This document shows positions 24,020-52,908 of a stretch of 64,000 bases of DNA, piece by piece. The translations under genes and the position numbers were made by a program. Each line of letters starts with the position of its first letter. Position 1 is the stretch's first letter. This DNA comes from Piromyces finnis finn (lineage: Eukaryota; Fungi; Neocallimastigomycota): assembly GCA_002104945.1 (NCBI GenBank), contig MCFH01000075.1:62001-126000 (forward strand), written 5' to 3'. Under the pieces are notes generated by a model. That model did not search any database, was not told where the DNA came from, and saw only the letters and a list, made by a program, of their open reading frames with translations.

Positions 24020-24376
24020 TTTTTCTTTTTTTTTTTTTATTTTTAACGGCTGTAAGGAAAAAATCAATAGGCCACTAAAGTTATAACTAGTGTATTTGAA
24101 CCTTCAACAGTTAAAAACTAAAATTTTGTCAAGAGAGAGAAAAAAAATAAAATTATTATTATTGATTGTTTTGACAGTTTGTCTTTATAATGTGTTCTTA
24201 ATTTATGACTTTGGTTCATTTAAATATACACCTTGATGTCTCATTAATGCTTAAATGGATTGTAATTAAAAAAAATTGTTTTGATCCATTATACATGATG
24301 ATCCTTTGTAAAGTTATGGTTTACTTCTTTTGAATGAGTAGGTGTTTTTGAACCATTTTTACTTTTATAAAGGGAT
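24020..24376 (-). pseudogene. Degenerate 3' end of an older family-A-like LINE, the left target flank of element A1
   Basis: Minus strand shows tgacaaaatttt, tcaaataca, actttagt..gtggc and ends gccgtt-poly(A), the same landmarks in the same order as the family A 3' UTR. Confidence 0.45.
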
Positions 24377-24385
24377 TTAAATCGT

Positions 24386-24445
<60 letters not shown>

Positions 24446-24679
24446 GGCATCAAATATTTTAAACTTTATTATTAATTTAATTAAAATTATAATACATGAA
24501 ATATAAAAATTAAAATAAAATAAAAATAAAAAAATATGTTTAAATAAACACAAATGAATAAAAATTGGGTATAATGTATTCTAGTAATTTTAATTAAAGT
24601 AAGAAAGCCACTATCATACTAAAGTATAATAATTGTATTTGACTTCCAATGGGACACCGAGCCAAAGATCAAAATTTTA

Positions 24680-27600
24680 TCATGGGACAAAATTATGATC
24701 TCCATTGGTTGCGCTGGCCCTCCTGGCCTGTCTTACTGTTTCTTCAGCATTGACGCTCTTGGATGTTGCTTCAAACCTTTTGAACATTGACCATTGCTGG
24801 CCAATAGCAAAAGGCATGATTTTGGTTAGAAGTTCCGCGGTTACCGTCAAGAATGGTGTTCCTTCATTAGTACCAGATTGAATCTGACGCTTACAAAGTT
24901 CTTTCCATTCCCTTGAATTGTAATTGATATTGTTAAAACTTCTTCCCCCAAGAAGGAATTTAAATATTTTACTGCACACACTAGAATAATCATACACATT
25001 AATATTCACCGGATTATTAGAACTATTACTATCATTAACTAAATTACTATCTAAATTAGAATTATTATCTTCACTATTGCTATCATTACTAATATTATTA
25101 TTTCTATTATTGTTATTATTACTATTGTTACTATTACTATTGTTATTATTACTATTGTTACTATTACTATTAATATTATTACTATCTCTACTGATATTAT
25201 CAATTTCATTATTATTGATAGGACTATTGGAATTACGTTGACTGAAAAAATTTAATAGCTGGACTATGGAATCATAATGTTTAATACGGATATCTCTAAA
25301 TGTTGGACAATCTAATAACCAATGTTTAATACTTTGATCTCCACACTTGCAACATGGACAGTAGTTAGGACAAACTGGATCAACAAATTTGGCAGCTTTG
25401 GCAACTCTAGCATCCAACTTGTATCCGCTTCTTGCTTTCAATAGCCAGTAGAAGCCATAGGCAAACTCTGGGTACTCATAACATAATTTAATAAAATCTT
25501 TAGTTTCAATAAACTTATTATCATCATAATATTGCGCTTTGATTGAATTCCCTTTGAGATCTTTCCAATAAAAGTTTTTAACTGCTTTAACATCTCCATG
25601 TTTCTTTAGTTTTTTATCAAGTGTCCTACTTGATTTGCACCACGTGTATTTTCTAAATTTAGGAATGTAATTGACAAGGTATGAGATAATACAATTTGAG
25701 TTTTTCCATTTGTTAAAACATCTAACCTGAGCTAACGCACATTTGGCTGACAATGGAGGAATATTCAAATCTTTTGAAATAGAGTATAAAGATATAAACG
25801 ATACAGCTTTATGAACTCCGGCAACCCATCGTATTCCTTTGTTAACATGCTTCTGTGCAATTCTAGACCTGGCTTTGTTGGATCCAAGTAATGGTGCAAA
25901 GTATGAAACTCTGCTAATCACTTGTGAGTTAAGTACTAGCTTTTTGAAGGGAATAGGAATATTAGGATTTCTTAAGAATTTACTGACTGAAAAAAGCCCT
26001 TTCAAAACCTTGTTATTAAGAGCTTTAATAACTGGTTTAAGGGACAGATTCTTATCAAATGGAACACCAAGATAAGTATAACAATCAGTAGTTGGAATGG
26101 GTTGTCCTGCTAAGTAAAATGTTGGATCTCTCTTGTTCTGATTTTCTATTGATTCAGGACGAATCACCATCGTTGAACACTTCTGGATACCAAATTCCAT
26201 TTCATTATACAAGGCCCATTCATTAACTCTTCTAAGCATCTTTTTTAAGCATCCTCTTGTTGGAGCACAAATAACTATATCATCTGCAAAAAGTCCACCA
26301 CAGCATCGAGTGTCACCTAAACTGACTCCGAGATCTTCACACTCTTTAAATATATCATTAATAAAGAGATTAAAGAGAATAGGAGAAAGAGGGCATCCTT
26401 GACGGACTCCTTTCTTCACATCAAAAGATTTCGAGAATTGTCCATCTAATTTGACATTAGCCTTAGATGTTAAATATAAATTTTTGATGAATTGTAAACT
26501 CTTACCTCGGATTCCTAAACAATCTAATTTATGGAGAATATTACCGATTGGGACTGAATCGTATGCTTTCCTGAGATCTAAAAAGGCCAAATATGTCTCT
26601 TTATTATCTAATTGACGTCTACGGCATATTTCTTGGATTGAAATGAAAAGACTGATACTTTCTTCCTTTTTTCGAAAACCAAATTGTTCAGGTCTAATGA
26701 AATTATTCTTTAGACCATATTCTGAGATTCTAGTGGTGACAATTTTGGAAATCAACTTAATACCATTATTGATAAGTGATATACCTCGATAGTTATCACA
26801 ATCTGTCAAATCTCCCTTCTTAGGAATAGAAACAATACTGGATTCATTCCATGAGTTGGGGAAGTCTCCATCCCAAATACGGTTGAATAATTTAAGAATA
26901 AAATTTAAACCATAAGCATCATTATCTGAAGTGGTATTACCGGAAGAATTATTATCTGTAGCATTATTAGAATCATTACTTGATGGAATTAATGCTTTGT
27001 AAAATTCAATTGGAATACCATCCGGACCTGATGCTTTATAATTCGGAGTAGTGAGGATAGCTGACTTGACTTCATCAATACTAATATCTTGGTTGATATC
27101 CCATTCATCAAGCATAGGGAGTGAAAAACGTTTATTCGTTGGTTCTTCATACCAATGCTCCAAATCAAGACTTACACCACTTGGATCTGATGCAAGCTTT
27201 TCGAAATGATCATGCCACACATCTAGTTGTTCTTCCGTAGCAACAACTAATTCTCCATTTTTGTTTTTAATTGGTTGAGCAATAAAGAAAGAATCTTTTC
27301 CAATTTTTGCAGTTTTCTTGATCCATTTCCAGGCCTTCTTAGGATTATGACTCTTCATATACTCACATCCTGTTTTAATCCAATGAAGATATTCTTGCTT
27401 CCTAAATTCATTACATCTTTTGTGGATGTAATCAATGAGCTTACGGTAGATTTTAATTCTTTTAATAAATTCATCTATATCATAAATTCTTTCTTTTTTA
27501 AATCTCTTATACAACTTCATTTTGATTTTTTGGAGATTAAAAATTTGTTGTGAAATATGAAATGAAGACTTTATAACATTATTTGCTGAGGTAATACTGA

Positions 27601-29200
27601 GCTCGTCTGCAATTGAAAAAGCAGTTGAAGTAAACTCTTTGGAAAGTTCATCTGTAGAAACATTAGGATCGTTGAATTTTGCTGAAAGTATTTGGAATTT
27701 ATTATGACTGAGAATAGATTCCTTTTCCTCAATACATTTTAATCTATTCCATTTCAGAATTTTCTTAGGAACATTAAAGTCATTAGAAAAATCTTCCATA
27801 GGAATAATTTTACCATTAATAAGAAGTGGCTTATGGTCTGATACAGGATAAAAATTATTTATAAATGATCCTGAGTGAATAAGATCTTTCATCTTCGAAT
27901 TGATAAGAGCATGGTCAATGTCGGAAGATTGATCACCTCGAGTCCAAGAGATAGTAGACCCTCTAAGCGGAAGAATTTCCCAATCTCCTAATCCATTAGT
28001 TGATAACCAGTTGGATAATTTTACTTTAGACATATTAAAATCACCAACAAGAATCGATGGATGGGATGAATGAGTTTGTAACCACAAGCGAACTTCTAAC
28101 TTTGCATGATCAACATAGATGTTGTGATGACTATGAGGCATATAAACATTTCCAATCGAGCATTTGAATCTATTCCAGAGACAAAAAGTATAAATAGAAA
28201 TAATATACTTTCCAGAGAAGTTTTCAAGTGAGGCTTGACACGAATTGTGAAAACCTAAATATAAACCTCTCATTCCCGGAACTGATTCGTCAGCTTTCTT
28301 GAAAAAGTGTCTATAGTTTCGCAAAGTAACACGACAAGGATAATCTGTATTCGATCCAGAACCATTACCAGTTTCTTGGAAACATAAGAATAATGGTTTG
28401 AAAATAGCTGTGAAATAGCTAATACTATCTCTCTTTTCATGATTCCACCCATTGGTGTTCCAACTAAGACAAAAAGAAAAGTTATCAGGCTTGTTGGATG
28501 AGGAAGAATCGTTGCTATTATTATTATTATTAAAGTCATCGTTATTAATGGATGATGCATCAGAGGAATAAGTAGAACTATTACTAGATGGCTGTGAAAC
28601 TGAAGAACTATCAACTATTGAACTGTTATCAGAGTTGATAGAACTATTAGAATTAATTGTTGAATGTTGAGATTGAAATTGTGTTTGCTGTAGATCTGGA
28701 ATATTTTCATGATGGGAAACTTGTTGAAGATCCTGTTGAAGATCTTGTTGAAGATCGGATTGTTGATGAGATTGTTGAACTGATTGTTGAACTGATTGTT
28801 GAAATGATTGTTGAATAGAATGTTGATGTTTATTAGAAACTAAAATTTTACGTTTGAGAGTGGAAAAAGTGTATTTGTGATTCCTTCTACTACGAGCTGA
28901 AAAGGAAATTGAGGTAACTGAAAGTTTCTTCTTTAACATGTGTAAGATTTTAATACAATCTTTTGATGAACCATGAACCTTGACTAAGAAAAAGTGATCA
29001 TTGAAAGTTTGAAAATATTTAACACTAATAACTGAATTAAATTTATCTTCTAGAATAACCTCGAGTTTTTCCCATAGCATATTTACTGACCATGATCGAA
29101 TACCACGGATAAAGAAGGAGCGAATATCATCTAAGGGGATACCATAAGACCGGGTACCACGTCTGATATAATTCTTATCTTTAATATAAAGGACTGACAT
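24680..29200 (-). CDS. LINE polyprotein: N-terminal domain, Q/S/N linker, APE endonuclease, reverse transcriptase, CCHC zinc knuckle
   Basis: APE motifs SWNTNG, CFQET, GNVY, LVGDFN, SDIDH, VSDHKP; RT motifs SGPDG, IPKKG, YRGISL, QFGFR, FLDLRKAYD, GVRQGCPLSPILF, LFADD, YTYLG; CPCCKC..H.LLDC. Confidence 0.96.
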   Translation of the reverse strand: MSVLYIKDKNYIRRGTRSYGIPLDDIRSFFIRGIRSWSVNMLWEKLEVILEDKFNSVISVKYFQTFNDHFFLVKVHGSSKDCIKILHMLKKKLSVTSISFSARSRRNHKYTFSTLKRKILVSNKHQHSIQQSFQQSVQQSVQQSHQQSDLQQDLQQDLQQVSHHENIPDLQQTQFQSQHSTINSNSSINSDNSSIVDSSSVSQPSSNSSTYSSDASSINNDDFNNNNNSNDSSSSNKPDNFSFCLSWNTNGWNHEKRDSISYFTAIFKPLFLCFQETGNGSGSNTDYPCRVTLRNYRHFFKKADESVPGMRGLYLGFHNSCQASLENFSGKYIISIYTFCLWNRFKCSIGNVYMPHSHHNIYVDHAKLEVRLWLQTHSSHPSILVGDFNMSKVKLSNWLSTNGLGDWEILPLRGSTISWTRGDQSSDIDHALINSKMKDLIHSGSFINNFYPVSDHKPLLINGKIIPMEDFSNDFNVPKKILKWNRLKCIEEKESILSHNKFQILSAKFNDPNVSTDELSKEFTSTAFSIADELSITSANNVIKSSFHISQQIFNLQKIKMKLYKRFKKERIYDIDEFIKRIKIYRKLIDYIHKRCNEFRKQEYLHWIKTGCEYMKSHNPKKAWKWIKKTAKIGKDSFFIAQPIKNKNGELVVATEEQLDVWHDHFEKLASDPSGVSLDLEHWYEEPTNKRFSLPMLDEWDINQDISIDEVKSAILTTPNYKASGPDGIPIEFYKALIPSSNDSNNATDNNSSGNTTSDNDAYGLNFILKLFNRIWDGDFPNSWNESSIVSIPKKGDLTDCDNYRGISLINNGIKLISKIVTTRISEYGLKNNFIRPEQFGFRKKEESISLFISIQEICRRRQLDNKETYLAFLDLRKAYDSVPIGNILHKLDCLGIRGKSLQFIKNLYLTSKANVKLDGQFSKSFDVKKGVRQGCPLSPILFNLFINDIFKECEDLGVSLGDTRCCGGLFADDIVICAPTRGCLKKMLRRVNEWALYNEMEFGIQKCSTMVIRPESIENQNKRDPTFYLAGQPIPTTDCYTYLGVPFDKNLSLKPVIKALNNKVLKGLFSVSKFLRNPNIPIPFKKLVLNSQVISRVSYFAPLLGSNKARSRIAQKHVNKGIRWVAGVHKAVSFISLYSISKDLNIPPLSAKCALAQVRCFNKWKNSNCIISYLVNYIPKFRKYTWCKSSRTLDKKLKKHGDVKAVKNFYWKDLKGNSIKAQYYDDNKFIETKDFIKLCYEYPEFAYGFYWLLKARSGYKLDARVAKAAKFVDPVCPNYCPCCKCGDQSIKHWLLDCPTFRDIRIKHYDSIVQLLNFFSQRNSNSPINNNEIDNISRDSNNINSNSNNSNNNNSNSNNSNNNNNRNNNISNDSNSEDNNSNLDSNLVNDSNSSNNPVNINVYDYSSVCSKIFKFLLGGRSFNNINYNSREWKELCKRQIQSGTNEGTPFLTVTAELLTKIMPFAIGQQWSMFKRFEATSKSVNAEETVRQARRASATNGDHNFVP

Positions 29201-29796
29201 GATAATAAATTCTAATTAAAAAATATTGAATATAAAATAAATACTAATAAAAATTACAAATATAACGTATATGGAAAAAAATCTGTCTCTCTCTCTCTTC
29301 TTAAAAGTACTGGATAGTACAAAAATTGTTACGATGCTTTGTTTAAAGTTTCTTTTTTTGAATTCTAGTTGTAAATTTTCTTTAAAAATTCTAGTTTTGG
29401 TTTGTTGTTAGTAAATTCGATTCGCTTTTTGACACTAAACTTGTTTGACTTTACTTTTCATTAAATATTTAAATTGGTAAAAAATTTGAATCAAGAATGT
29501 CGACACCAGAAAGCTTGTGAATAGTATTTTTACATGATGTAGAGTGAATCAGTCTCTTACAAGAAACAATACAACAATAGCTACATGAATATAAAAGTAC
29601 AATGCAAATGCTAAAGTTGACTACATTGGATTCTTACAAGAGAAGAGTAGTACTACATGAATACATGAATAAAAGAAAAAATACAGCAACAAAATGTATT
29701 ACACTTCTAATTAAATACTATACAAACTTACCTGAAAAATCAAACATTCACTTATTCATCAAATACTTAAATTTGATGAATAAAATGTTTTTTAAT

Positions 29797-30090
29797 CGCT
29801 CAGTACCATGAGCTTAGTCCTAATAATTTTCCCTTGAAGACTAACCAAGCATCCATTGCGCAATGCTTGGATTTAATTCTTTCTACTCTCTCAGTACCAT
29901 GAGCATGAGTAGACCCCCTTGAGAAATTACATTTATTAAATAAATGAAGGCACATTCCTAAGAGGGCACCAAGCATCCATTGCGCAATACTTGGATTTAA
30001 TTCTTTCTACTCTCTCAGTACCATGAGCATGAGTAGACCCCCTTGAGAAACTACATTTATTAAATAAATGAAGGCACGTTCCCAAGAGGG
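29797..30090 (-). ncRNA. Putative structured RNA / internal-promoter module at the 5' end of LINE A1: two ~124-nt monomers plus two further hairpins
   Basis: Tandem monomers 29967-30090 and 29845-29966; multiple stems with compensatory changes between copies; near-identical module at 52588-52759. Confidence 0.6.
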
Positions 30091-30102
30091 TTAAATCGTA
30101 GA

Positions 30103-30327
30103 AACTCTTTCAAAAATCTTAATTACTTCTATATACCCGTGTGCATAATAATATATATATTATTACTGAATGAAAATTGTTTGATAGAATATTTTAATGC
30201 AACATCTTTTCATATTTTAAAACATTTCTTGGTTTTATTATATATTACAAAAAAATATATAAAGCAATATTTCTACAATATTCATTCATATATATATATA
30301 AAATACTTTTCAACAATACCACGAATA
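30103..30327 (-). pseudogene. Possible degenerate fragment of the N-terminal ORF region of an older A-like LINE (right target flank of A1)
   Basis: Broken translation YIRGI ... KKCFKI*KDVALKYSIKQFSFS resembles A1 FFIRGI ... KDCIKILHMLKKKLSVTSISFS; weak. Confidence 0.3.
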
Positions 30328-30339
30328 TACAAATAATTT

Positions 30340-30341
<2 letters not shown>

Positions 30342-30404
<63 letters not shown>
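30342..30404. repeat. (ATT)21 microsatellite in the GDH1 3' flank
   Basis: Directly visible; paralogous to the much longer tract at 52911-53405. Confidence 0.95.
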
Positions 30405-30826: not shown

Positions 30827-32266
30827 TTACCACCAGTCACCGTGAACCTTCATGGCATTGGCAACCTTAATGAAACCAGTAATGTTGGCACCTTGGACAA
30901 GAGATGGAAGAGCTGAAACTGTGGCATCAGCCTTCTTGGCAGAAGCCTTAACTTCTCCAAGAACTTCACGAGTGTAAGTGGCTGAATTGTCAACAGATTC
31001 GTTGAAGATGTTGGTCATGATGTTGTTTAATTCTTCATCAACACGAGCTGGAGTCCAGGTCATACGTTGAGAGTTTTGGGCCATTTCAAGAGCAGAAACT
31101 GCAACACCACCAGCATTGGAGGCCTTACCTGGTGCATACCAGAATTGTCCAGTTGGCTTACCAGACTTAACAGATTCGTTGTAGGCAACACGAAGAGCTT
31201 CCATCTTTTGGACTGCGGCATCAGTAGATCCCATGTTGGAACCTTCAGCAACAAGGAAACATCCTGCCTTAACTAAAGCTTCAACATCATCAGCATCGTT
31301 TTCATTTTGTGTAGCACATGGAAGAGCAATGTCAACCTTTGGAAGGTTCTTCCATGGTCTTTGTCCTGGTAACCAAGTGAAACGATCATCCTTGATTTCT
31401 TCAAGTGATCCCTTTCTGACCTTAAGTTCGGCAATGAAATCAATATCAGCATGAGTGAATGGCTTGGAGGCATCCTTAACAATAAGTGCTCCACGAGAAT
31501 CTGATAATGACATAACAATAGCTCCAAGATCAATTAACTTCTTGGCTGCAAATTGAGCAACATTACCGGAACCTGAAACAGCACAGTACTTACCCTTGAT
31601 GTCCTTACCCATGTAAGTAAGCATGTTTAAGACAAAGTAAATTAAACCGTAACCAGTAGCTTCTGGACGGATGTAAGAACCGTTAAGACCGTAACGAGTA
31701 TCCTTACCAGTGAGGACACCAAAGTCACGCTTTTGTTGAAGACGCTTGTAGGCACCATATAAGAAGCCAACTTCACGACCACCAACACCAATATCACCAG
31801 CTGGAACATCAATATCAGCTCCAATGTGACGGTGGAGTTCAGTCATGAAAGCTTGACAGAATCTTCTGATTTCATTATCAGACTTGTCGTGTGGATCGAA
31901 GTTGGATCCTCCCTTACCACCACCAATTGGAAGACCGGTTAAGGCGTTCTTGAAGATTTGTTCAAAACCTAAGAACTTAAGAATGGAAAGGTTAACAGAT
32001 GGATGGAATCTTAAACCACCCTTGTATGGACCAATAGCTGAGTTGAATTGGACACGGTAACCCTTGTTGATTCTGGTGTTACCTTCATCATCTTCCCAAG
32101 TGACACGGAATTGAATAATTCTTTCTGGTTCAACAATAACTGGAAGACATCTCTTAAGATCTGGGTGCTTTTCGAAAACAGTGGATTCGGTTAAAGACTT
32201 GACGATTTCGTCACGAGCTTGTTCGAATTCTGGTTCGATTCCGTGAGTGAATTCAATATCAGACAT
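30827..32266 (-). CDS. gdhA: NADP-specific glutamate dehydrogenase, copy 1 (intronless, 479 aa)
   Basis: EPEFEQA, GYRVQFNSAIGPYKGGLRFHPSVNLSILKFLGFEQIFKNALTGLP, GGGKGG, VPAGDIGVG, RPEATGYG, SGSGNVAQ, KASNAGGVAVS, C-terminal GDWW typical of fungal NADP-GDH; strong codon bias. Confidence 0.97.
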   Translation of the reverse strand: MSDIEFTHGIEPEFEQARDEIVKSLTESTVFEKHPDLKRCLPVIVEPERIIQFRVTWEDDEGNTRINKGYRVQFNSAIGPYKGGLRFHPSVNLSILKFLGFEQIFKNALTGLPIGGGKGGSNFDPHDKSDNEIRRFCQAFMTELHRHIGADIDVPAGDIGVGGREVGFLYGAYKRLQQKRDFGVLTGKDTRYGLNGSYIRPEATGYGLIYFVLNMLTYMGKDIKGKYCAVSGSGNVAQFAAKKLIDLGAIVMSLSDSRGALIVKDASKPFTHADIDFIAELKVRKGSLEEIKDDRFTWLPGQRPWKNLPKVDIALPCATQNENDADDVEALVKAGCFLVAEGSNMGSTDAAVQKMEALRVAYNESVKSGKPTGQFWYAPGKASNAGGVAVSALEMAQNSQRMTWTPARVDEELNNIMTNIFNESVDNSATYTREVLGEVKASAKKADATVSALPSLVQGANITGFIKVANAMKVHGDWW

Positions 32267-33812: not shown

Positions 33813-35252
33813 ATGTCTGATATTGAATTCACTCACGGAATCGAACCAGAATTCGAACAAGCTCGTGACGAAATCGTCAAGTCTTTAACCGAATCCACTG
33901 TTTTCGAAAAGCACCCAGATCTTAAGAGATGTCTTCCAGTTATTGTTGAACCAGAAAGAATTATTCAATTCCGTGTCACTTGGGAAGATGATGAAGGTAA
34001 CACCAGAATCAACAAGGGTTACCGTGTCCAATTCAACTCAGCTATTGGTCCATACAAGGGTGGTTTAAGATTCCATCCATCTGTTAACCTTTCCATTCTT
34101 AAGTTCTTAGGTTTTGAACAAATCTTCAAGAACGCCTTAACCGGTCTTCCAATTGGTGGTGGTAAGGGAGGATCCAACTTCGATCCACACGACAAGTCTG
34201 ATAATGAAATCAGAAGATTCTGTCAAGCTTTCATGACTGAACTCCACCGTCACATTGGAGCTGATATTGATGTTCCAGCTGGTGATATTGGTGTTGGTGG
34301 TCGTGAAGTTGGCTTCTTATATGGTGCCTACAAGCGTCTTCAACAAAAGCGTGACTTTGGTGTCCTCACTGGTAAGGATACTCGTTACGGTCTTAACGGT
34401 TCTTACATCCGTCCAGAAGCTACTGGTTACGGTTTAATTTACTTTGTCTTAAACATGCTTACTTACATGGGTAAGGACATCAAGGGTAAGTACTGTGCTG
34501 TTTCAGGTTCCGGTAATGTTGCTCAATTTGCAGCCAAGAAGTTAATTGATCTTGGAGCTATTGTTATGTCATTATCAGATTCTCGTGGAGCACTTATTGT
34601 TAAGGATGCCTCCAAGCCATTCACTCATGCTGATATTGATTTCATTGCCGAACTTAAGGTCAGAAAGGGATCACTTGAAGAAATCAAGGATGATCGTTTC
34701 ACTTGGTTACCAGGACAAAGACCATGGAAGAACCTTCCAAAGGTTGACATTGCTCTTCCATGTGCTACACAAAATGAAAACGATGCTGATGATGTTGAAG
34801 CTTTAGTTAAGGCAGGATGTTTCCTTGTTGCTGAAGGTTCCAACATGGGATCTACTGATGCCGCAGTCCAAAAGATGGAAGCTCTTCGTGTTGCCTACAA
34901 CGAATCTGTTAAGTCTGGTAAGCCAACTGGACAATTCTGGTATGCACCAGGTAAGGCCTCCAATGCTGGTGGTGTTGCAGTTTCTGCTCTTGAAATGGCC
35001 CAAAACTCTCAACGTATGACCTGGACTCCAGCTCGTGTTGATGAAGAATTAAACAACATCATGACCAACATCTTCAACGAATCTGTTGACAATTCAGCCA
35101 CTTACACTCGTGAAGTTCTTGGAGAAGTTAAGGCTTCTGCCAAGAAGGCTGATGCCACAGTTTCAGCTCTTCCATCTCTTGTCCAAGGTGCCAACATTAC
35201 TGGTTTCATTAAGGTTGCCAATGCCATGAAGGTTCACGGTGACTGGTGGTAA
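33813..35252 (+). CDS. gdhA: NADP-specific glutamate dehydrogenase, copy 2
   Basis: Translation identical to copy 1. Confidence 0.97.
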   Translation: MSDIEFTHGIEPEFEQARDEIVKSLTESTVFEKHPDLKRCLPVIVEPERIIQFRVTWEDDEGNTRINKGYRVQFNSAIGPYKGGLRFHPSVNLSILKFLGFEQIFKNALTGLPIGGGKGGSNFDPHDKSDNEIRRFCQAFMTELHRHIGADIDVPAGDIGVGGREVGFLYGAYKRLQQKRDFGVLTGKDTRYGLNGSYIRPEATGYGLIYFVLNMLTYMGKDIKGKYCAVSGSGNVAQFAAKKLIDLGAIVMSLSDSRGALIVKDASKPFTHADIDFIAELKVRKGSLEEIKDDRFTWLPGQRPWKNLPKVDIALPCATQNENDADDVEALVKAGCFLVAEGSNMGSTDAAVQKMEALRVAYNESVKSGKPTGQFWYAPGKASNAGGVAVSALEMAQNSQRMTWTPARVDEELNNIMTNIFNESVDNSATYTREVLGEVKASAKKADATVSALPSLVQGANITGFIKVANAMKVHGDWW

Positions 35253-38548: not shown

Positions 38549-39988
38549 ATGTCTGATATTGAATTCACTCACGGAATCGAACCAGAATTCGAACAAGCTC
38601 GTGACGAAATCGTCAAGTCTTTAACCGAATCCACTGTTTTCGAAAAGCACCCAGATCTTAAGAGATGTCTTCCAGTTATTGTTGAACCAGAAAGAATTAT
38701 TCAATTCCGTGTCACTTGGGAAGATGATGAAGGTAACACCAGAATCAACAAGGGTTACCGTGTCCAATTCAACTCAGCTATTGGTCCATACAAGGGTGGT
38801 TTAAGATTCCATCCATCTGTTAACCTTTCCATTCTTAAGTTCTTAGGTTTTGAACAAATCTTCAAGAACGCCTTAACCGGTCTTCCAATTGGTGGTGGTA
38901 AGGGAGGATCCAACTTCGATCCACACGACAAGTCTGATAATGAAATCAGAAGATTCTGTCAAGCTTTCATGACTGAACTCCACCGTCACATTGGAGCTGA
39001 TATTGATGTTCCAGCTGGTGATATTGGTGTTGGTGGTCGTGAAGTTGGCTTCTTATATGGTGCCTACAAGCGTCTTCAACAAAAGCGTGACTTTGGTGTC
39101 CTCACTGGTAAGGATACTCGTTACGGTCTTAACGGTTCTTACATCCGTCCAGAAGCTACTGGTTACGGTTTAATTTACTTTGTCTTAAACATGCTTACTT
39201 ACATGGGTAAGGACATCAAGGGTAAGTACTGTGCTGTTTCAGGTTCCGGTAATGTTGCTCAATTTGCAGCCAAGAAGTTAATTGATCTTGGAGCTATTGT
39301 TATGTCATTATCAGATTCTCGTGGAGCACTTATTGTTAAGGATGCCTCCAAGCCATTCACTCATGCTGATATTGATTTCATTGCCGAACTTAAGGTCAGA
39401 AAGGGATCACTTGAAGAAATCAAGGATGATCGTTTCACTTGGTTACCAGGACAAAGACCATGGAAGAACCTTCCAAAGGTTGACATTGCTCTTCCATGTG
39501 CTACACAAAATGAAAACGATGCTGATGATGTTGAAGCTTTAGTTAAGGCAGGATGTTTCCTTGTTGCTGAAGGTTCCAACATGGGATCTACTGATGCCGC
39601 AGTCCAAAAGATGGAAGCTCTTCGTGTTGCCTACAACGAATCTGTTAAGTCTGGTAAGCCAACTGGACAATTCTGGTATGCACCAGGTAAGGCCTCCAAT
39701 GCTGGTGGTGTTGCAGTTTCTGCTCTTGAAATGGCCCAAAACTCTCAACGTATGACCTGGACTCCAGCTCGTGTTGATGAAGAATTAAACAACATCATGA
39801 CCAACATCTTCAACGAATCTGTTGACAATTCAGCCACTTACACTCGTGAAGTTCTTGGAGAAGTTAAGGCTTCTGCCAAGAAGGCTGATGCCACAGTTTC
39901 AGCTCTTCCATCTCTTGTCCAAGGTGCCAACATTACTGGTTTCATTAAGGTTGCCAATGCCATGAAGGTTCACGGTGACTGGTGGTAA
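38549..39988 (+). CDS. gdhA: NADP-specific glutamate dehydrogenase, copy 3
   Basis: Translation identical to copy 1. Confidence 0.97.
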   Translation: MSDIEFTHGIEPEFEQARDEIVKSLTESTVFEKHPDLKRCLPVIVEPERIIQFRVTWEDDEGNTRINKGYRVQFNSAIGPYKGGLRFHPSVNLSILKFLGFEQIFKNALTGLPIGGGKGGSNFDPHDKSDNEIRRFCQAFMTELHRHIGADIDVPAGDIGVGGREVGFLYGAYKRLQQKRDFGVLTGKDTRYGLNGSYIRPEATGYGLIYFVLNMLTYMGKDIKGKYCAVSGSGNVAQFAAKKLIDLGAIVMSLSDSRGALIVKDASKPFTHADIDFIAELKVRKGSLEEIKDDRFTWLPGQRPWKNLPKVDIALPCATQNENDADDVEALVKAGCFLVAEGSNMGSTDAAVQKMEALRVAYNESVKSGKPTGQFWYAPGKASNAGGVAVSALEMAQNSQRMTWTPARVDEELNNIMTNIFNESVDNSATYTREVLGEVKASAKKADATVSALPSLVQGANITGFIKVANAMKVHGDWW

Positions 39989-40741
39989 ATTAGTTAAAAA
40001 CTTTTTTTTTTATTTATTTAAAGAAAAGTTTTCTTTAATATTTCGAAAGGAATATTTTAAAATTCATAAATAATTTTGAAAGTAATTAATTCAAAGAATT
40101 TAATTACGAAACATTTAAATTTTCATAACTATCCAAATTTATTAAAGTAAAGATTGAAATTAATAATTAAATTATTAATATTAATACTAGTAATAATAAT
40201 AATATTAACACCTACTACTAATACTAACAATATACCATAAAAGTTTTAATTAATTAGTAAAACTTTATAGAGAGAATAATATGTATAAAATTGAACAATT
40301 TGTAATTTTTGTAATATAATATAATATAATAATAAAAAAGTACATTTAATAAAATAATAAAATAAATAAAATATAAAAATATAAATATGAATATGCTGTA
40401 TTTGTGTAATTTATTATATATTTGTGGAAGTTTAGTGAAATAAATTAATAAAATTTAAATAATATTTTGAGTTTATTATTTTAATTAATTTGAATTAGAT
40501 TTAATCTATAATTTTTATAAATTTATTCTTTAAAAGTATTTCATGATTGATGTAATATGATGTAAGGCAAGGATGTTTGCTTTTCTCTATTTCTAATACT
40601 TTTCAATATTTTAATTAAAAATGTTTAAATAAATATGAATAATATTAATGTCAGTGTAGAAAATAATGCTACTAAAATATTATACTTGCTAATATATATA
40701 TATTATTATTACTATTATTATCAACAATAAATCAACAAATA

Positions 40742-43700
40742 ACTGGTAATGGTTCTGGTTCGAATACAGATTATCCTTGTCGTGTTACTTTGCGAAACTA
40801 TAGACACTTTTTCAAGAAAGCTGATGAATCAGTTCCTGGAATGAGAGGTTTATATTTAGGTTTTCACAATTCGTGTCAAGCCTCACTTGAAAACTTCTCT
40901 GGAAAGTATATTATTTCTATTTATACTTTTAGTCTTTGGAATAGATTCAAATGCTCGATTGGAAATGTTTATATGCCTCATAGTCATCACAACATCTATG
41001 TTGATCATGCAAAGTTAGAAGTTCGCTTGTGGTTACAAACTCATTCATCCCATCCATCGATTCTTGTTGGTGATTTTAATATGTCTAAAGTTAAATTATC
41101 CAACTGGTTATCAACTAATGGATTAGGAGATTGGGAAATTCTTCCGCTTAGAGGGTCGACTATCTCTTGGACTCGAGGTGATCAATCTTCCGACATTGAC
41201 CATGCTCTTATCAATTTGAAGATGAAAGATCTTATTCACTCAGGATCATTTATAAATAATTTTTATCCTGTATCAGACCATAAGCCACTTCTTATTAATG
41301 GTAAAATTATTCCTATGGAAGATTTTTCTAATGACTTTAATGTTCCTAAGAAAATTCTGAAATGGAATAGATTAAAATGTATTGAGGAAAAGGAATCTAT
41401 TCTCAGTCATAATAAATTCCAAATACTTTCATCAAAATTCAACGATCCTAATGTTTCTACAGATGAACTTTCCAAAGAGTTTACTTCAACTGCTTTTTCA
41501 ATTGCAGACGAGCTCAGTATTACCTCAGCAAATAATGTTATAAAGTCTTCATTTCATATTTCACAACAAATTTTTAATCTTCAAAGAATCAAAATGAAGT
41601 TATATAAGAGATTTAAAAAAGAAAGAATTTATGATATAGATGAATTTATTAAAAGAATTAAAATCTACCGTAAGCTCATTGATTACATCCACAAAAGATG
41701 TAATGAATTTAGGAAACAAGAATATCTTCATTGGATTAAAACAGGTTGTGAGTATATGAAGAGTCATAATCCTAAGAAGGCCTGGAAATGGATCAAGAAA
41801 ACTGCAAAAATTGGAAAAGATTCCTTCTTTATTGCTCAACCAATTAAAAATAAAAATGGAGAATTAGTTGTTGCTACGGAAGAACAACTTGAAGTGTGGC
41901 ATGATCATTTCGAAAACCTTGCATCAGATCCAAGTGGTGTAAGTTTTGATTTGGAGCATTGGTATGAAGAACCAACGAATAAACGTTTTTCACTTCCTAT
42001 GCTTGATGAATGGGATATCAACCAAGATATTAGTATTGATGAAGTCAAGTCAGCTATCCTCTCTACTCCAAATTATAAAGCATCAGGTCCGGATGGTATT
42101 CCAATTGAATTTTACAAAGCATTAATTCCATCAAGTAATGATTCTAATAATGCTACAGGTAATAATTCTTCCGGTAATACCACTTCAGATAATGATGCTC
42201 ATGGTTTAAATTTTATACTTAAATTATTCAACCGTATTTGGGATGGAGACTTCCCCAACTCATGGAATGAATCCAGTATTGTTTCTATTCCTAAGAAGGG
42301 AGATTTGACAGATTGTGATAACTATCGAGGTATATCACTTATCAATAATGGTATTAAGTTGATTTCAAAAATTGTCACCACTAGAATCTCAGAATATGGT
42401 TTAAAGAATAATTTCATTAGACCTGAACAATTTGGTTTTCGAAAAAAGGAAGAAAGTATCAGTCTTTTCATTTCAATCCAAGAAATATGCCGTAGACGTC
42501 AATTAGAAAATAAAGAGACATATTTGGCCTTTTTAGATCTCAGGAAAGCATACGATTCAGTCCCAATCGGTAATATTCTCCATAAATTAGATTGTTTAGG
42601 AATCCGAGGTAAGAGTTTACAATTTATCAAAAATTTATATTTAACATCTAAGGCTAATGTCAAATTAGATGGACAATTCTCGAAATCTTTTGATGTGAAG
42701 AAAGGAGTCCGTCAAGGATGCCCTCTTTCTCCTATTCTCTTTAATCTCTTTATTAATGATATATTTAAAGAGTGCGAAGATCTAGGAGTCAGTTTAGGTG
42801 ACACTCAATGCTGTGGTGGACTTTTTGCAGATGATATAGTTATTTGTGCTCCAACAAGAGGATGCTTAAAAAAGATGCTTAGAAGAGTTAATGAATGGGC
42901 CTTGTATAATGAAATGGAATTTGGTATCCAGAAGTGTTCAACGATGGTGATTCGTCCTGAATCAATAGAAAATCAGAACAAGAGAGATCCAACATTTTAC
43001 TTAGCAGGACAACCCATTCCAACTACTGATTGTTATACTTATCTTGGTGTTCCAATTTGATAAGAATCTGTCCCTTAAACCAGTTATTAAAACTCTTAAT
43101 AACAAAGTTTTGAAAGGACTTTTTTCAGTCAGTAAATTCTTAAGAAATCCTAATATTCCTATTCCCTTCAAAAAACTAGTACTTAACTCACAAGTGATTA
43201 GCAGAGTTTCATACTTTGCACCATTACTTGGATCCAACAAAGCTAGGTCTAGGATTGCTCAGAAGCATGTTAACAAAGGAATACGATGGGTTGCCGGAGT
43301 TCATAAAGCTGTATCGTTTATATCTTTATACTCTATTTCAAAAGATTTGAATATTCCTCCATTGTCAGCCAAATATGCGTTAGCTCAGGTTAGATGTTTT
43401 AACAAATGGAAAAACTCAAATTGTATTATCTCACACCTTGTCAATTACATTCCTAAATTTAGAAAATACACGTGGTGCAAATCAAGTAGGACACTTGATA
43501 AAAAACTAAAGAAACATGGAGATGTTAAAGCAGTTAAAAACTTTTATTGGAAAGATCTCAAAGGGAATTCAATCAAAGCGCAATATTATGATGATAATAA
43601 ATTTATTGAAACTAAAGATTTTATTAAATTATGTTATGAGTACCCAGAGTTTGCCTATGGCTTCTACTGGCTATTGAAAGCAAGAAGCGGATACAAGTTG

Positions 43701-44747
43701 GATGCTAGAGTTGCCAAAGCTGCTAAATTTGTTGATCCAGTTTGTCCTAACTACTGTCCATGTTGCAAGTGTGGAGATCAAAGTATTAAACATTGGTTAT
43801 TAGATTGTCCAGCATTTAGAGATATCCGTATTAAACATTATGATTCCATAGTCCAGCTATTAAATTTTTTCAGTCAACGTAATTCCAATAGTCCTATCAA
43901 TAATAATGAAATTGATAATATCAGTAGAGATAGTAATAACATTAATAGTAATAGTAACAATAGTAGTAATAACAATAGTAATAGTAACAATAGTAATAGT
44001 AACAATAGTAATAGTAACAATAGTAATAATAACAATAGTAGTAATAGAAATAGTAATAATAACAATAGTAATAATAACAATAATAGAAATAATAATATTA
44101 GTAATGATAGCAATAGTGAAGATAATAATTCTAATTTAGATAGTAATTTAGTTAATGATAGTAATAGTTCTAATAATCCGGTGAATATTAATGTGTATGA
44201 TTATTCTAGTGTGTGCAGTAAAATATTTAAATTCCTTCTTGGGGGAAGAAGTTTTAACAATATTAATTACAATTCAAGGGAATGGAAAGAACTTTGTAAG
44301 CGTCAGATTCAATCTGGTACTAACGAAGGAACACCATTCTTGACGGTAACCGCGGAACTTCTAACCAAAATCATGCCTTTTGCTATTGGCCAGCAATGGT
44401 CAATGTTCAAAAGGTTTGAAGCAACATCCAAGAGCGTCAATGCTGAAGAAACAGTAAGACAGGCCAGGAGGGCCAGCGCAACCAATGGAGATCATAATTT
44501 TGTTCCATGACAAAATTTTGATCTTTGGCTCGGTGTCCCATTGGAAGTCAAATACAATTATTGTACTTTAGTATGATAGTGGCTTTCTTACTTTAATTAA
44601 AATTACTAGAATACATTATACCCAATTTTTATTCATTTGTGTTTATTTAAACATATTTTTTTTTATTTTTATTTTAATTTTAATTTTTTTATTACATGTA
44701 TTATAATTTTAATTAAATTAATAATAAAGTTTAAAATATTTGATGCC

Positions 44748-51356: not shown

Positions 51357-52587
51357 TTTGAAAGAACTTATTATGACAATAGATATTAATAATTTGAAGT
51401 ATTGATATAATGATATAAATAAGATAATGAAATAAAATATATAGTAAAATAAAAATAATAATAGTAAAGACGGATATATTATATAGCAAGTGGATTATTT
51501 GTCAAACAATATTTTAAATTTTATAACTGGAAAAGTGGCTAAGTTGTTGACAAACTTAGTTCTAACTCTACTGAAGACTTTAAACGGGAAGATAAATTTT
51601 GAATATCTATCACTTTGGATTTCTGTATTATAACTGTATTTTGAAAGCTCTTTATATTTATAAGAATTGTATAATTTATTGGATGATTATTGTATTGTGT
51701 TGATTCTGATTGTTGAAATTGAACATTCATTTAGGTTGTTTATGTTGTAAGGTAGAGAGATAATAAGAGTGAAAAGTTGTTATATCAAAAATAATGGAAA
51801 AAAGTTGAAGAATTTTGGGTAAACATAATAAATTTTTTTTTTTTTTTTAAAGATAAAATTGAAACAAGAGTAGTATTTACAATATAAAAATAGAATACTT
51901 GATTTTCCAGGATAGAAGCTTTGATAATAAAAGTGTTAAAAAAAAGGTGTTAATACTTACCATAATAGTCCATAATAAACCTAATTAAGTTATACAGATA
52001 TATAAATATAAATATAATATAAAGTATAAGAAATATATATATATATAGAAAAGAGATAGAAAAAGTATACAAAAGAATGTTAGTAGAAAAGAGATTCCTT
52101 GGAAAATCTAGAGTTACAAAAAAATAAGAAATAAAAAAAGATATTACTAGAATCATATAAAATCATAAAGGAAAAATAAAAAAGCCGCGCCCCTCGAAAA
52201 TAATAAAAATAGAAAAAAATAAAAGATTAAATATGATTATAGTAATGAAAGCTGCACCCCACACGAAACTCAAGAATAAATAAAAGGAATAACAAACTAA
52301 CTGAAAAAACAAAACTATCTGACTAATCAACATATAAAGAATAAAAAAGGAATAAAAGAACAAAGAGAATAAATAGTAAACTGGGATAACAAATTATCGA
52401 TGAAAGCTAAAATAAAAATGAAATCAAGAAATATTCAAAATCAGTATTTAATACTACCGAATCAAACAATTTTAAGTTTAAAATAATATGTTATAAAAGT
52501 TGTTAAAGCAACTACTATCTAAAAAATAAGTTGAAGGTGTAAGGGATATATGATATAACAACTAACACTCAAATTATCAACTCTGTT

Positions 52588-52759
52588 CGCTCAGTACCAT
52601 GAGCTTAGTCCTAATAATATTTCCAAATAAAGACTAACCAAGTATCCATTGCGCAATACTTGGATTTAATTCTTTCTACTCTCTCAGTACCATGAGCATG
52701 AGTAGACCCCCTTGAGAAACTACATTTATTAAATAAATGAAGGCACGTACCCAAGAGGG
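52588..52759 (-). ncRNA. Putative structured RNA / internal-promoter module at the 5' end of LINE B (one monomer plus two hairpins)
   Basis: Near-identical to the A1 5' module; differences fall mainly in loops or preserve pairing. Confidence 0.6.
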
Positions 52760-52774
52760 TAAAATATTATTGAT

Positions 52775-52896
52775 GAAGAAATTAAATAGTATAGGAGAAA
52801 GAAGACATTCCTGTCTTACACCATGATTGATAAGAATTTCATTAGAAAGCACGAGCTTTTGAGTTGGAGTAAAGATATTAAGAAAATCAAAACATT
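52775..52896 (-). pseudogene. Upstream RT remnant of the old B' element, truncated at the GDH4 duplicated block
   Basis: Translates CFDFLNIF..HGVRQECLLSPILFNFFINNI, continuous across the TSD with 46971 and below. Confidence 0.85.
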
Positions 52897-52908
52897 TACA
52901 AATAATTT

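What the first reader, a model, noticed from the sequence alone, without database searches (positions are those of the whole stretch)
29797..30090. Covarying multi-hairpin RNA with a possible pseudoknot at the exact 5' end of full-length LINEs: candidate novel ribozyme or structured cis-element
On the element (minus) strand the module reads as follows. P1 is CCCUCUUGGGAAC/GUUUCUCAAGGGGG, enclosing an internal GUGCC and a CAUUUAUU/AAUAAAUG hairpin. P2 is UCUACUC/GAGUAGA capped by CUCA-UGGUAC-UGAG. P3 is CCAAGYAU/AURCUUGG. P4 is UUAGUCUU/AGGACUAA. P5 is GCUCA-UGGUAC-UGAGC. Seen directly across the three monomer copies (two in A1, one in B): one P3 pair occurs as U-G, C-G and U-A; a P1 pair switches from C-G to U-A; the P4 loop differs between A and B while the stem is unchanged. 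The unpaired GUGCC can pair with the GGUAC loop (5 bp, pseudoknot-like). Established: several non-LTR clades (R2, RTE, L1Tc) carry 5' HDV-like self-cleaving ribozymes that define the 5' end. Inference: this may be an analogous but different motif, since I could not fit it to HDV, hammerhead, twister or hairpin consensus. Covariation rests on only three copies.
Basis: partly seen in the sequence, partly recalled or inferred. Interest (0 to 1): 0.85.

Follow-up and report, generated by a model that had tools for sequence, protein, structure and literature searches.

The report
Folded RNA head of fungal LINE
A very abundant jumping gene (LINE) of an anaerobic gut fungus starts, at its first base, with a chain of RNA hairpins; related elements keep the same shapes with different sequences, so the fold is real and uncatalogued, but nothing here shows that it cuts itself.

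Summary
The hairpins are at 29797-30090 on the minus strand as described. The 124-nt unit folds far better than shuffles (z -4.7). Element A starts exactly at C30090: a 12-nt target-site duplication abuts it, as in 9 of 13 full-length copies. Twenty-one distinct genomic copies give no compensatory change, and the score equals the shuffles.

The fold is nevertheless supported by homologous LINEs from gut metagenomes (44-64% protein identity). They start with CCC(C/U) and keep a terminal stem from nt 1-2, a two-tier hairpin with a YRGUAC loop, and a hairpin with a GCGCAAUG loop, all on different stem sequences. Covariation beats 500 of 500 shuffles. The sense strand folds 4-20 kcal/mol better than the antisense in 10 of 10 modules.

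Rfam has no match, and the HDV topology does not fit. The internal monomer never forms a 5' end (0 of 120). Best reading: an uncatalogued, non-catalytic 5'-terminal cis-acting RNA of a Neocallimastigomycota LINE clade. Its monomers were probably built by reverse-transcriptase template jumps. A ribozyme remains untested (about 0.1). Two earlier follow-ups of this scan, on other windows of the same genome, reached a similar verdict.

The parts
29967..30090 (-). Monomer 1 (m1), the 5'-terminal 124 nt of LINE A. It holds P1 (nt 1-12 with 42-53) with an inner hairpin, the two-tier P2 with a UGGUAC loop (nt 54-85), and P3 with a GCGCAAUG loop (nt 97-122). C30090 is nt +1.
   Evidence: Fold (z -4.7). 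CM hit of 155.6 bits. The 5' end is set by 30 loci and by the target-site duplication TCTACGATTTAA.
29843..29966 (-). Monomer 2 (m2), the internal copy. It differs from m1 by G8A, C13U, G40A, U102C and G124U. Its P1 refolds to 13 bp with one bulge.
   Evidence: Genome-wide it is always preceded by G (120 of 120) and never by A, C or T.
29797..29842 (-). Tail of the module: P4 (UUAGUCUU/AGGACUAA, with a variable loop) and P5 (GCUCA-UGGUAC-UGAGC, a second YRGUAC-loop hairpin). The sequence shared by LINE families A and B ends at ...GAGCGA.
   Evidence: The A/B comparison rests.
29201..29796 (-). Rest of the 890-nt 5' UTR. It carries 20 upstream AUGs, an array of YWUGUAR motifs, and a further conserved hairpin at 29541-29557 (AGAG-ACUGAUUCA-CUCU).
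   Evidence: The stem varies as AGAG/CUCU, UGAG/CUCA, GGAG/CUCC and GGAA/UUCC in 9 homologues, and 100% of cells are paired.
24680..29200 (-). Single ORF of LINE A (1506 aa). It encodes an N-terminal ferredoxin-like domain, an apurinic/apyrimidinic-type (APE) endonuclease region, a reverse transcriptase and a C-terminal Cys-His motif.
   Evidence: Pfam RVT_1, E = 1e-35. Exo_endo_phos matches the family B ORF and the homologues. The N-terminal domain model has pLDDT 82.
24390..24679 (-). 3' UTR ending in ...GAUGCCGUU followed by poly(A), then the 3' copy of the target-site duplication.
   Evidence: Repeat listing (24346-24478). The same 3' end followed by poly(A) is seen in 18 other copies.
52585..52759 (-). 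The same module with a single monomer at the 5' end of LINE B (ORF 51356-47058). B is a nested insertion into an older LINE copy, with a target-site duplication of about 14 nt.
   Evidence: 155.1 bits; the 3' flank continues the old reverse-transcriptase reading frame.

Best explanation
The region is the 5'-terminal cis-acting RNA module of a very young, very abundant single-ORF LINE (apurinic/apyrimidinic-type (APE) endonuclease plus reverse transcriptase). The host is an anaerobic gut fungus whose assembly matches Piromyces finnis in size and contig number.

**Shown**
- The RNA, and therefore each new copy, starts exactly at C1.
- The first 124-175 nt form, on the sense strand, three elements: a terminal stem P1 that closes the 5' end, a two-tier hairpin presenting a 6-nt YRGUAC loop, and a hairpin presenting a GCGCAAUG loop.
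- This architecture is kept, with covarying stems, in related LINE families of other gut fungi. It is therefore a selected RNA structure and not a by-product of repeats.
- Two LINE families in this genome, A and B, differ in their ORFs (about 70% DNA identity over the repeats compared) and share the module.

**Inferred**
- The module acts without catalysis, as the 5' handle of the LINE RNA. The conserved loops would be recognition sites for the element's own protein or for host factors. In R2, 5' RNA structure bound by the R2 protein is reported to direct the late steps of integration (recalled from memory).
- A stable stem at nt 1 and 20 upstream AUGs argue against ordinary cap-dependent scanning. 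The module may therefore also serve 5'-end protection and internal translation initiation.
- The same DNA probably carries the internal promoter.
- The tandem 'monomers' are not an independent repeat family. They arise when reverse transcriptase reaches C1 and jumps onto the 3' end of a short 5' fragment of another LINE RNA. The joints are always [1..x]|C1.
For: **Fold and 5' end**
- The fold is real.
- The 5' end is exact.
- At least 40 copies are 100% identical over 265 nt. A covariance-model (CM) search of the genome gave about 4800 first-look candidates, and its 150 best are near-identical.

**Homologous families**
- Homologous LINEs at 44-70% protein identity were found.
- Their 5' ends begin with CCC(C/U).
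- Uninterrupted P1 helices of 8-12 bp start at nt 1-2 in three lineages (A/B, L031/L037, L034/L190). Shuffles reach the same length in 2-21 of 2000 trials.
- L035/L033 has 12 bp with one bulge.

**Covariation**

| Element | Observed score | Shuffle mean | Shuffles reaching it | Best slid control |
|---|---|---|---|---|
| P2 apex | 0.844 | 0.358 | 0 of 500 | 0.27 |
| P3 | 0.622 | 0.295 | 0 of 500 | - |
| Downstream hairpin | 0.518 | 0.264 | 0 of 500 | - |

- Seven of 19 GUAC sites sit in a 6-nt loop on a stem of at least 4 bp, against 4.7% of all positions.
- L034 and L190 differ at 7 of 80 paired columns against 38 of 87 unpaired columns (Fisher p = 2e-7). All paired changes keep the pair.

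**Strand.** The sense-strand MFE is 4-20 kcal/mol lower than the antisense MFE in 10 of 10 modules.

**Sharing between families.** Family B copies carry the same module. Their first monomer is identical to A's m1 and is joined exactly at 124|1.

**Head-to-tail pieces.** L001, L002, L006, L010, L016, L027 and L007 carry pieces [1..x]|C1 with no element in between.

**Translation context.** There are 20 upstream AUGs.

**Candidate binding partner.** The ORF begins with a conserved N-terminal beta-alpha-beta-beta-alpha-beta domain.
Against: - No experiment bears on function. Protein binding, translation and promoter roles are all inferences.
- The comparative set is small: about six lineages and ten loci.
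- The rows of the P2-apex alignment were chosen for having a stem of at least 3 bp.
- For loci known from a single copy, the 5' ends (L036, L192) are guesses, and those two lack a long P1.
- The N-terminal domain gave only generic ferredoxin-like structural matches and no Pfam hit.
- A pyrimidine (C) as first base is unusual for RNA polymerase II initiation (established knowledge). This leaves room for a processing step.
- The sequencing runs were available only as assembled contigs and say nothing about RNA 5' ends.
Confidence: 0.6

Rival explanations
1. The module is a self-cleaving ribozyme of a new class. It cuts 5' of C1 out of read-through transcripts and so defines the LINE 5' end, as HDV-like ribozymes do in R2, RTE and L1Tc, and as twister variants do in Perere-3.
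For: - The 5' end is exact and independent of the flank.
- P1 starts at nt 1-2 in several lineages.
- The first base is C, which is atypical for Pol II starts.
- No extra G lies between the target-site duplication and C1 in 13 copies.
- Nt 14-18 could contact the P2 loop in three lineages.
- There is precedent for ribozymes at LINE 5' ends (PMC3185411, PMC3383444, PMC8501958).
Against: - No Rfam ribozyme family matches at E <= 10 or at E <= 1 in eight homologous loci.
- The HDV strand order (P1-P2-P3-P1'-P4-P2') cannot be drawn. P1 is a continuous 12-bp helix, and no 3' partner for a P2 exists after the P4-like hairpin.
- The three elements are serial hairpins with no multi-helix junction.
- No junction nucleotides are conserved between families. 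Spacers vary from 0-1 nt (L031) to 11 nt (A).
- Monomer 2 keeps all stems yet is never a 5' end (0 of 120). L1Tc's ribozyme, in contrast, is said to separate tandem copies (PMC3383444).
- Thousands of dispersed young copies fit an element with its own promoter better than one that depends on read-through.
Confidence: 0.1
2. The monomers are only DNA-level promoter repeats, like mouse L1 monomers. The conserved GTAC and (T)TGCGCAAT motifs are transcription-factor sites, the latter resembling a C/EBP-type bZIP palindrome (from memory). The RNA hairpins are incidental.
For: - The repeats are tandem, variable in number and lie at the 5' end.
- The conserved blocks are short and palindrome-like: GTAC, GCGC and TGATTCA.
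- The module has been swapped between LINE families, as L1 5' UTRs are.
- Very many autonomous copies imply an internal promoter somewhere in the element.
Against: - Sequences flanking a factor site have no reason to stay complementary to each other while changing. Yet stems covary around conserved loops in three separate hairpins.
- G-U pairs make the sense strand fold 4-20 kcal/mol better than the antisense in 10 of 10 modules. A duplex-DNA signal would not show this.
- Repeat joints are always at C1, with variable 3' cut-offs. That is the signature of template jumps at the RNA level, not of unequal crossing-over.
- A promoter role may coexist with the RNA structure; what the data contradict is 'hairpins incidental'.
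Confidence: 0.15
3. The module is an RNA-RNA pairing (dimerisation) device. The self-complementary loop cores GUAC and GCGC form kissing complexes between LINE RNAs. Two RNAs are thereby held together, and reverse transcriptase jumps between them.
For: - Both conserved loops contain palindromes: YRGUAC and (U)GCGCA.
- A GUAC-like segment also lies at nt 13-19 in three lineages.
- Head-to-tail joints show frequent jumps from C1 onto other LINE 5' fragments or poly(A) tails.
- From memory, retroviral dimer-initiation loops are 6-nt palindromes.
Against: - A 4-nt palindrome is weak.
- GCGCAAUG as a whole is not symmetric.
- The acceptor cut-offs fit 3'-trimmed RNA fragments equally well, with no need for a dimer.
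- The LINE pieces I first read as jumps into ORF regions proved to be ordinary nested insertions with target-site duplications.
- No direct evidence for dimers exists.
Confidence: 0.08

Closest known systems
HDV-like ribozymes at the 5' ends of R2, RTE and L1Tc (L1TcRz/Pr77)
   Same: Both are structured RNAs that begin at nt +1 of a LINE, with a P1 stem starting at the first base. Both travel with the element. In L1Tc the same 77 nt are also the internal promoter (PMC3383444, PMC3185411).
   Different: The nested double-pseudoknot strand order is absent here. No Rfam HDV, CPEB3 or drz model matches. The internal tandem copy does not create 5' ends. Cleavage has not been tested.
Twister-variant ribozymes at the 5' end of Perere-3 (Schistosoma mansoni)
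   Same: Both lie at the 5' end of a LINE that is not site-specific, with target-site duplications next to the structure (PMC8501958).
   Different: In Perere-3 the target-site duplication supplies part of P1. Here P1 lies wholly inside the element and the duplication abuts C1. No twister model matches.
Mouse L1 5'-UTR monomers (A, Tf, Gf)
   Same: Both are tandem repeats, variable in number, at the 5' end of a LINE. In both, the 5' module has been exchanged between lineages (from memory for L1; here).
   Different: Each unit here is a covarying RNA fold. The joints are always at the RNA's first base, with varied 3' cut-offs.
R2 5' RNA protein-binding motif (5' PBM)
   Same: Both are structured 5' RNAs of a single-ORF LINE. 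In R2 this RNA is bound by the element's protein and governs second-strand steps (from memory). This is the functional analogy I favour.
   Different: There is no sequence or structural similarity. Binding has not been tested here. R2 is site-specific and uses a different endonuclease.

Membership tests
HDV-like self-cleaving ribozyme | Strand order P1(5')-P2(5')-P3 hairpin-P1(3')-P4 hairpin-J4/2 with a catalytic C-P2(3'), forming a nested double pseudoknot. | tested here: not met
   P1 is one continuous 12-bp helix. After the P4-like hairpin (nt 54-85) no segment is complementary to nt 8-30 that could form P2. This comes from reading the sequence.
HDV-like self-cleaving ribozyme | A match to the Rfam covariance models (HDV, CPEB3, drz-Agam and others). 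| tested here: not met
   There are no hits at gathering score over the whole window. None appear at E <= 10 in 29600-30250 or at E <= 1 in eight homologous loci.
HDV-like or any self-cleaving ribozyme | Site-specific self-cleavage that gives 5'-OH and 2',3'-cyclic phosphate ends. | not testable with these tools
   Only assembled contigs of the sequencing runs were available, so RNA ends cannot be seen. The indirect evidence is that internal monomer 2 is never a 5' end (0 of 120).
Hammerhead, twister, twister-sister, pistol, hatchet and hairpin ribozymes | A match to the family's conserved core and helix junction, as captured by the Rfam models. | tested here: not met
   Searches give no hit. 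The module is a series of hairpins without a multi-helix junction.
LINE 5'-UTR monomer repeats (mouse L1 type) | Tandem units at the 5' end that vary in number between copies. | tested here: met
   Copies carry one to four units.
LINE 5'-UTR monomer repeats (mouse L1 type) | Promoter activity of the units. | not testable with these tools
   No reporter data or transcription-start data were available.
Conserved structured RNA (Rfam-type family) | Base pairs kept through compensatory changes in independent lineages, more than controls give. | tested here: met
   each beat 500 of 500 shuffles and all slid controls. The caveat is that few lineages were available and the P2-apex rows were pre-selected for having a stem.

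The most novel reading that the evidence does not exclude
The module is a new class of self-cleaving RNA, or the substrate of a specific host endonuclease. It would create the unusual C-initiated 5' end of the LINE RNA, with P1 docking beside P2 through the contact between nt 14-18 and the YRGUAC loop. Internal monomers would be silenced by pairing with their neighbours.
Probability: 0.1. Interest if true: 0.85.

Novelty: new variant of a known kind. Interest (0 to 1): 0.5.

Why it matters
LINE 5' ends are poorly understood outside a few animals and trypanosomes. In particular it is unclear how an element that loses everything upstream of its RNA start keeps a defined 5' end, a promoter and a way to be translated.

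This fungal clade offers four useful features:
- an exact 5' end and thousands of young copies;
- a compact, covarying RNA fold with two conserved loops;
- clear footprints of reverse-transcriptase template jumping that build 'monomers';
- loops, stems and a candidate N-terminal binding domain that can all be mutated.

Together these make the questions 'what defines a LINE 5' end' and 'how do 5' monomers arise' directly testable. The fold is absent from Rfam and could be added as a family. It would also help to annotate full-length LINEs in anaerobic fungal genomes.

Tried and rejected
1. **Covariation inside this genome.** 95 copies (21 distinct) are too alike, and the score equals the shuffles.
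2. **Metagenome scan.** I scanned with TGGTACN{15,45}GCGCAATG. 
3. **Viral-contig scan with the downstream-hairpin pattern.** It gave three chance hits in coding DNA. One related-loci run failed because I gave the wrong reading frame.
4. **Other families' modules in this genome.** Searches with the modules of L034, L035 and L031 found nothing.
5. **Reads.** Only Logan contigs of uncertain library type were available. The unique flank at 30200-30399 has depth 0 in all four runs. One metatranscriptome contig covers 29760-29982. There is no information on RNA starts.
6. **A reading I withdrew.** I first read LINE-ORF pieces lying just upstream of C1 as template jumps. That included the reverse-transcriptase fragment upstream of element B at 52760-52900. 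Target-site duplications and the continuation of the old reading frame after the poly(A) tail show they are nested insertions, all in sense orientation.
7. **N-terminal domain as an RRM.** Foldseek gives only generic ferredoxin-like matches (TM about 0.4), and Pfam gives nothing. The claim is reduced to 'beta-alpha-beta-beta-alpha-beta fold'.
8. **MAFFT/RNAalifold across families.** P1 aligned correctly, but P2 and P3 were misaligned. I therefore tested the helices separately.
9. **Literature.** I found no paper on LINE 5' structures in Neocallimastigomycota.
Full report
**Setting**

The window is contig C206:62001-126000 of a 56,455,805-bp assembly in 232 contigs. Its GC content is 14-35%. 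Size and contig number equal the published Piromyces finnis assembly (56.46 Mb, 232 contigs; PMC5622200). The nearest named protein relatives come from Neocallimastix and Orpinomyces.

On the minus strand lies LINE A:
- 5' end at 30090
- an 890-nt 5' UTR
- one ORF at 29200-24680 (1506 aa; RVT_1)
- a 3' end ...GATGCCGTT followed by poly(A) near 24390-24450

A second LINE, B, has its ORF at 51356-47058 with Exo_endo_phos and RVT_1. It starts at 52759. The two ORFs are about 70% identical in DNA over the repeats compared.

All named stems are recovered by folding. The monomer folds at -43.4 kcal/mol against -27.0 for shuffles (z -4.7). The 301-nt module gives z -5.3, and the B module gives z -3.9. 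The three named variations among the copies are real. The C13-G40 to U13-A40 switch belongs to a re-registered 13-bp P1 in monomer 2.

The 5' end is exact.
- Thirty fetched copies all begin at CCCTCTTGGG whatever lies upstream.
- This copy has the 12-nt target-site duplication TCTACGATTTAA directly against C30090.
- Across 13 copies with a recognisable duplication (12 scored plus this one), 9 have no base between the duplication and C1. Four have one odd base (C, A, T, T), never G.

The element is very young and abundant. At least 40 copies are 100% identical over 265 nt. A genome-wide covariance-model search gave about 4800 first-look candidates, and its 150 best were near-identical.

Within this genome there are 95 module copies (21 distinct). 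They show no pair with changes on both sides, and the covariation score equals that of shuffles (0.038 against 0.037). Three copies prove nothing.

I therefore looked for relatives. The ORF has homologues at 44-70% identity on short contigs from gut metagenomes and other assemblies. Ten of these contigs gave DNA upstream of the ORF. Where two copies of a family exist (L031/L037, L034/L190, L035/L033), similarity starts at CCC(C/U).

These families share almost no primary sequence with A, yet repeat its layout.

*P1, the terminal stem from nt 1-2:*

| Lineage | 5' strand / 3' strand |
|---|---|
| A | CCCUCUUGGGAA / UUCUCAAGGGGG |
| L031 | CCCUCCGGG / UCUGGAGGG |
| L034 | CCCCUAGCAGG / CUUGCUAGGGG |
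| L035 | CCCCGAUGAAGA / UCUUCAUC(A)GGGG |

The uninterrupted helices of 8-12 bp in A/B, L031/L037 and L034/L190 are reached by 2-21 of 2000 shuffles. L035/L033 has 12 bp with one bulge. A and L031 align over P1 and show U-A becoming C-G and U-A becoming G-U.

*P2, a two-tier hairpin whose apex is a 6-nt loop YRGUAC:*

| Hairpin | Stem-loop-stem |
|---|---|
| A P2 | CUCA-UGGUAC-UGAG |
| A P5 | GCUCA-UGGUAC-UGAGC |
| L034 | AUUCCU-CAGUAC-GGGAAU |
| L190 | AUUCCU-CAGUAC-AGGAAU |
| L192 | CUUC-UAGUAC-GAAG |
| L191 | CCA-CAGUAC-UGG |

All six pairs show changes on both sides. The score is 0.844 against 0.358 for shuffles (0 of 500 reach it), and slid controls stay at or below 0.27. The rows were chosen for a stem of at least 3 bp. 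As an unselected control, 7 of all 19 GUAC sites in the first 320 nt sit in such a loop on at least 4 bp, against 4.7% of all positions.

*P3, a hairpin with the loop GCGCAAUG:*
- A: CCAAGUAUU / GAUGCUUGG
- L031/L037: AACAUUAU / AUAAUGUU
- L036: CCAAACAUC / GAUG(C)UUUGG

Six of nine pairs show changes on both sides, and 0 of 500 shuffles reach the score.

*Other support:*
- A further hairpin about 540 nt into the UTR (window 29541-29557) has the loop NYUGAUUCA and stems AGAG/CUCU, UGAG/CUCA, GGAG/CUCC and GGAA/UUCC in nine sequences. All cells are paired, and 0 of 500 shuffles reach the score.
- L034 and L190 differ at 7 of 80 paired columns and at 38 of 87 unpaired columns (Fisher p = 2e-7). 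All seven paired changes keep the pair.
- The sense strand folds 4-20 kcal/mol better than the antisense strand in 10 of 10 modules. This points to RNA rather than duplex DNA.

I conclude that a selected sense-strand RNA structure exists. The sample is small (about six lineages). Two single-copy loci (L036, L192) lack a long P1, possibly because their 5' ends are mis-set.

**Is it a ribozyme?**

No Rfam family matches. There is nothing at gathering score in the window. Only a chance miRNA hit at E = 4.8 appears in 29600-30250. Nothing relevant appears at E <= 1 in eight homologous loci.

The HDV strand order cannot be drawn. P1 is one continuous helix, and no 3' partner for a P2 follows the P4-like hairpin. 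The module is a row of hairpins without a multi-helix junction. The spacers between hairpins are not conserved: 0-1 nt in L031 and 11 nt in A. What is conserved is the 5' CCC, its GGG partners and two apical loops.

The internal monomer gives an indirect test. The start of monomer 2 (CCCTCTTAGGAATGTGCCTTC) occurs 120 times in the genome. It is always preceded by G (the end of monomer 1) and never by A, C or T. Yet its P1 is intact. An autonomous ribozyme, or an autonomous initiator, in each unit should have produced copies that start there. L1Tc's ribozyme is described as separating tandem copies (PMC3383444).

This test is not decisive. Monomer 2 carries G8A and a bulge near the putative site. 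In family B the tail-adjacent monomer type is found both internal and terminal.

Three points favour some processing step. The first base is a pyrimidine, the end is exact, and no cap-derived G is seen. I put the ribozyme reading at about 0.1.

The proposed GUGCC/GGUAC contact has counterparts: CCGUA with UACGG in L031, and GUAC with GUAC in L034, L190 and L192. Both partners are GUAC-like and GUAC is self-complementary. Tertiary pairing, intermolecular kissing and a repeated protein site therefore cannot be told apart.

**How the monomers arise**

Several copies carry partial units joined head to tail with no element in between (L001, L002, L006, L010, L016, L027, L007). Every joint is [1..x]|C1. 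The observed cut-offs are:
- x = 124
- x = 213 plus an extra g (position 89 of monomer 2)
- x = 89/90, 95 and 64
- x = 45/46 (twice in one locus)
- x = 18, 14, 12 and 8
- poly(A)|C1

Spacings of 124, 129, 137, 213/214, 234 and 281 nt occur elsewhere in the genome. This is the footprint of reverse transcriptase reaching the RNA's first base and continuing on another template. End-to-end jumping is established for R2 and group II intron reverse transcriptases.

The commonest cut-offs lie 2-5 nt 3' of a hairpin base: P3 ends at nt 122 and P2 at nt 85. I infer that the acceptors are 3'-trimmed 5' fragments of LINE RNA.

Family B two-monomer copies carry a first monomer identical to A's m1, joined exactly at 124|1 to a B-type monomer. 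This fits a jump and does not fit crossing-over within the unit. It also explains how two LINE families share one module.

*A correction to my own earlier reading.* LINE-ORF pieces directly upstream of C1 are nested insertions into older copies. They have target-site duplications, and the old reading frame continues after the poly(A) tail. This applies to L008, L011, L019, L024, L026 and L020, and to the reverse-transcriptase fragment at window 52760-52900. All seven are in sense orientation.

**Most likely function**

- Shown: a conserved 5'-terminal RNA fold with two conserved loops, shared between LINE lineages.
- Inferred: a non-catalytic cis-element.

A stable stem at nt 1 and 20 upstream AUGs in 890 nt make ordinary cap-scanning unlikely. 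The module may therefore protect the 5' end and support internal initiation. The loops are natural recognition sites for the element's protein.

The ORF begins with a conserved beta-alpha-beta-beta-alpha-beta domain. The model has pLDDT 82. It gives only generic ferredoxin-like structural matches and no Pfam hit. In R2, 5' RNA structure bound by the protein is reported to govern late integration steps (from memory), and I offer that as the analogy. The DNA probably also holds the internal promoter. That can coexist with the RNA fold but does not explain the covariation.

**Comparison and novelty**

The nearest known things are:
- HDV-like ribozymes with the Pr77 promoter in L1Tc;
- twister variants in Perere-3 (PMC8501958);
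- mouse L1 monomers;
- the R2 5' protein-binding RNA.

The module works like a LINE 5' cis-element, but it meets none of the tested membership criteria of the ribozyme families. It is absent from Rfam, and I found no paper on it. I class it as a new variant of a known kind.

Two earlier follow-ups of this scan, on other windows of the same genome (s1-176575 and s1-182138), reached a similar verdict. I reached mine from my own tests. A first-reader note on this window (s1-185777) had already flagged that two LINE families share the module, and I confirmed it.

**Limits**

The single metagenome scan was wasted on a pattern that was too loose. The contig look-ups are exhausted. The sequencing runs were assembled contigs only. 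No RNA 5'-end chemistry, cleavage, binding or promoter data exist.

Noticed in passing
L001:1060-1625; L002, L006, L010, L016, L027, L007 (same region of each locus); G000:C156:866069-866603: There are head-to-tail arrays of partial 5' units, all restarting at C1. The cut-offs are x = 124, 213 plus g, 89/90, 95, 64, 45/46, 18, 14, 12 and 8, or a poly(A) tail. They cluster 2-5 nt 3' of hairpin bases. I read these as serial reverse-transcriptase template jumps onto trimmed 5' RNA fragments.
   Followed up: partly
window 52760-52900 and 45500-46900; L008, L011, L019, L024, L026, L020 with L197-L206: Full-length LINEs sit nested in older LINE copies, with target-site duplications of 11-14 nt. All seven cases are in the same orientation as the host copy. 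This suggests a strand-asymmetric target preference of the endonuclease.
   Followed up: partly
window 29541-29557 (-), and 29560-29700 (-): A further conserved hairpin (NGAG-NYUGAUUCA-CUCN) has covarying stems in nine LINE families. It is flanked by about seven YWUGUAR motifs (CAUGUAG, CUUGUAAG), which also recur in the other families' UTRs. Their meaning is unknown.
   Followed up: partly
window 28811-29200 (-), ORF aa 1-130: The LINE ORF begins with a conserved domain of about 100 aa (RRGxRCYG...LIFIHxLxSW...YFxIKV). It is predicted to fold as beta-alpha-beta-beta-alpha-beta (pLDDT 82). There is no Pfam hit, and only generic ferredoxin-like structural matches were found.
   Followed up: partly
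window 30827-32266 (-), 33813-35252 (+), 38549-39988 (+), 53835-55274 (-), 56802-58244 (-): There is a cluster of 479-480-aa ORFs in duplicated segments. The first is a Glu/Leu/Phe/Val dehydrogenase by Pfam. The others have the same length and lie in 97-100% identical repeats, but I did not test them individually. LINEs A and B each lie just downstream of one copy.
   Followed up: no
window 52920-53400 versus 30340-30400: The (TAA)n microsatellite between the dehydrogenase gene and the LINE is about 480 nt long at the B locus and about 60 nt long at the A locus, within otherwise 97-100% identical flanks.
   Followed up: no
window 40740-44510 (+): A 5'-truncated family A LINE starts inside the endonuclease region. 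Its ORFs lie at 40790-43060 and 43044-44510, and RVT_1 matches the first.
   Followed up: no
window 59596-61056 (+), 62122-63636 (-): Two paralogous ORFs carry an esterase Ig-like N-terminal domain and a Peptidase_S9/hydrolase domain. They lie in a diverged duplication (74-88% identity).
   Followed up: no
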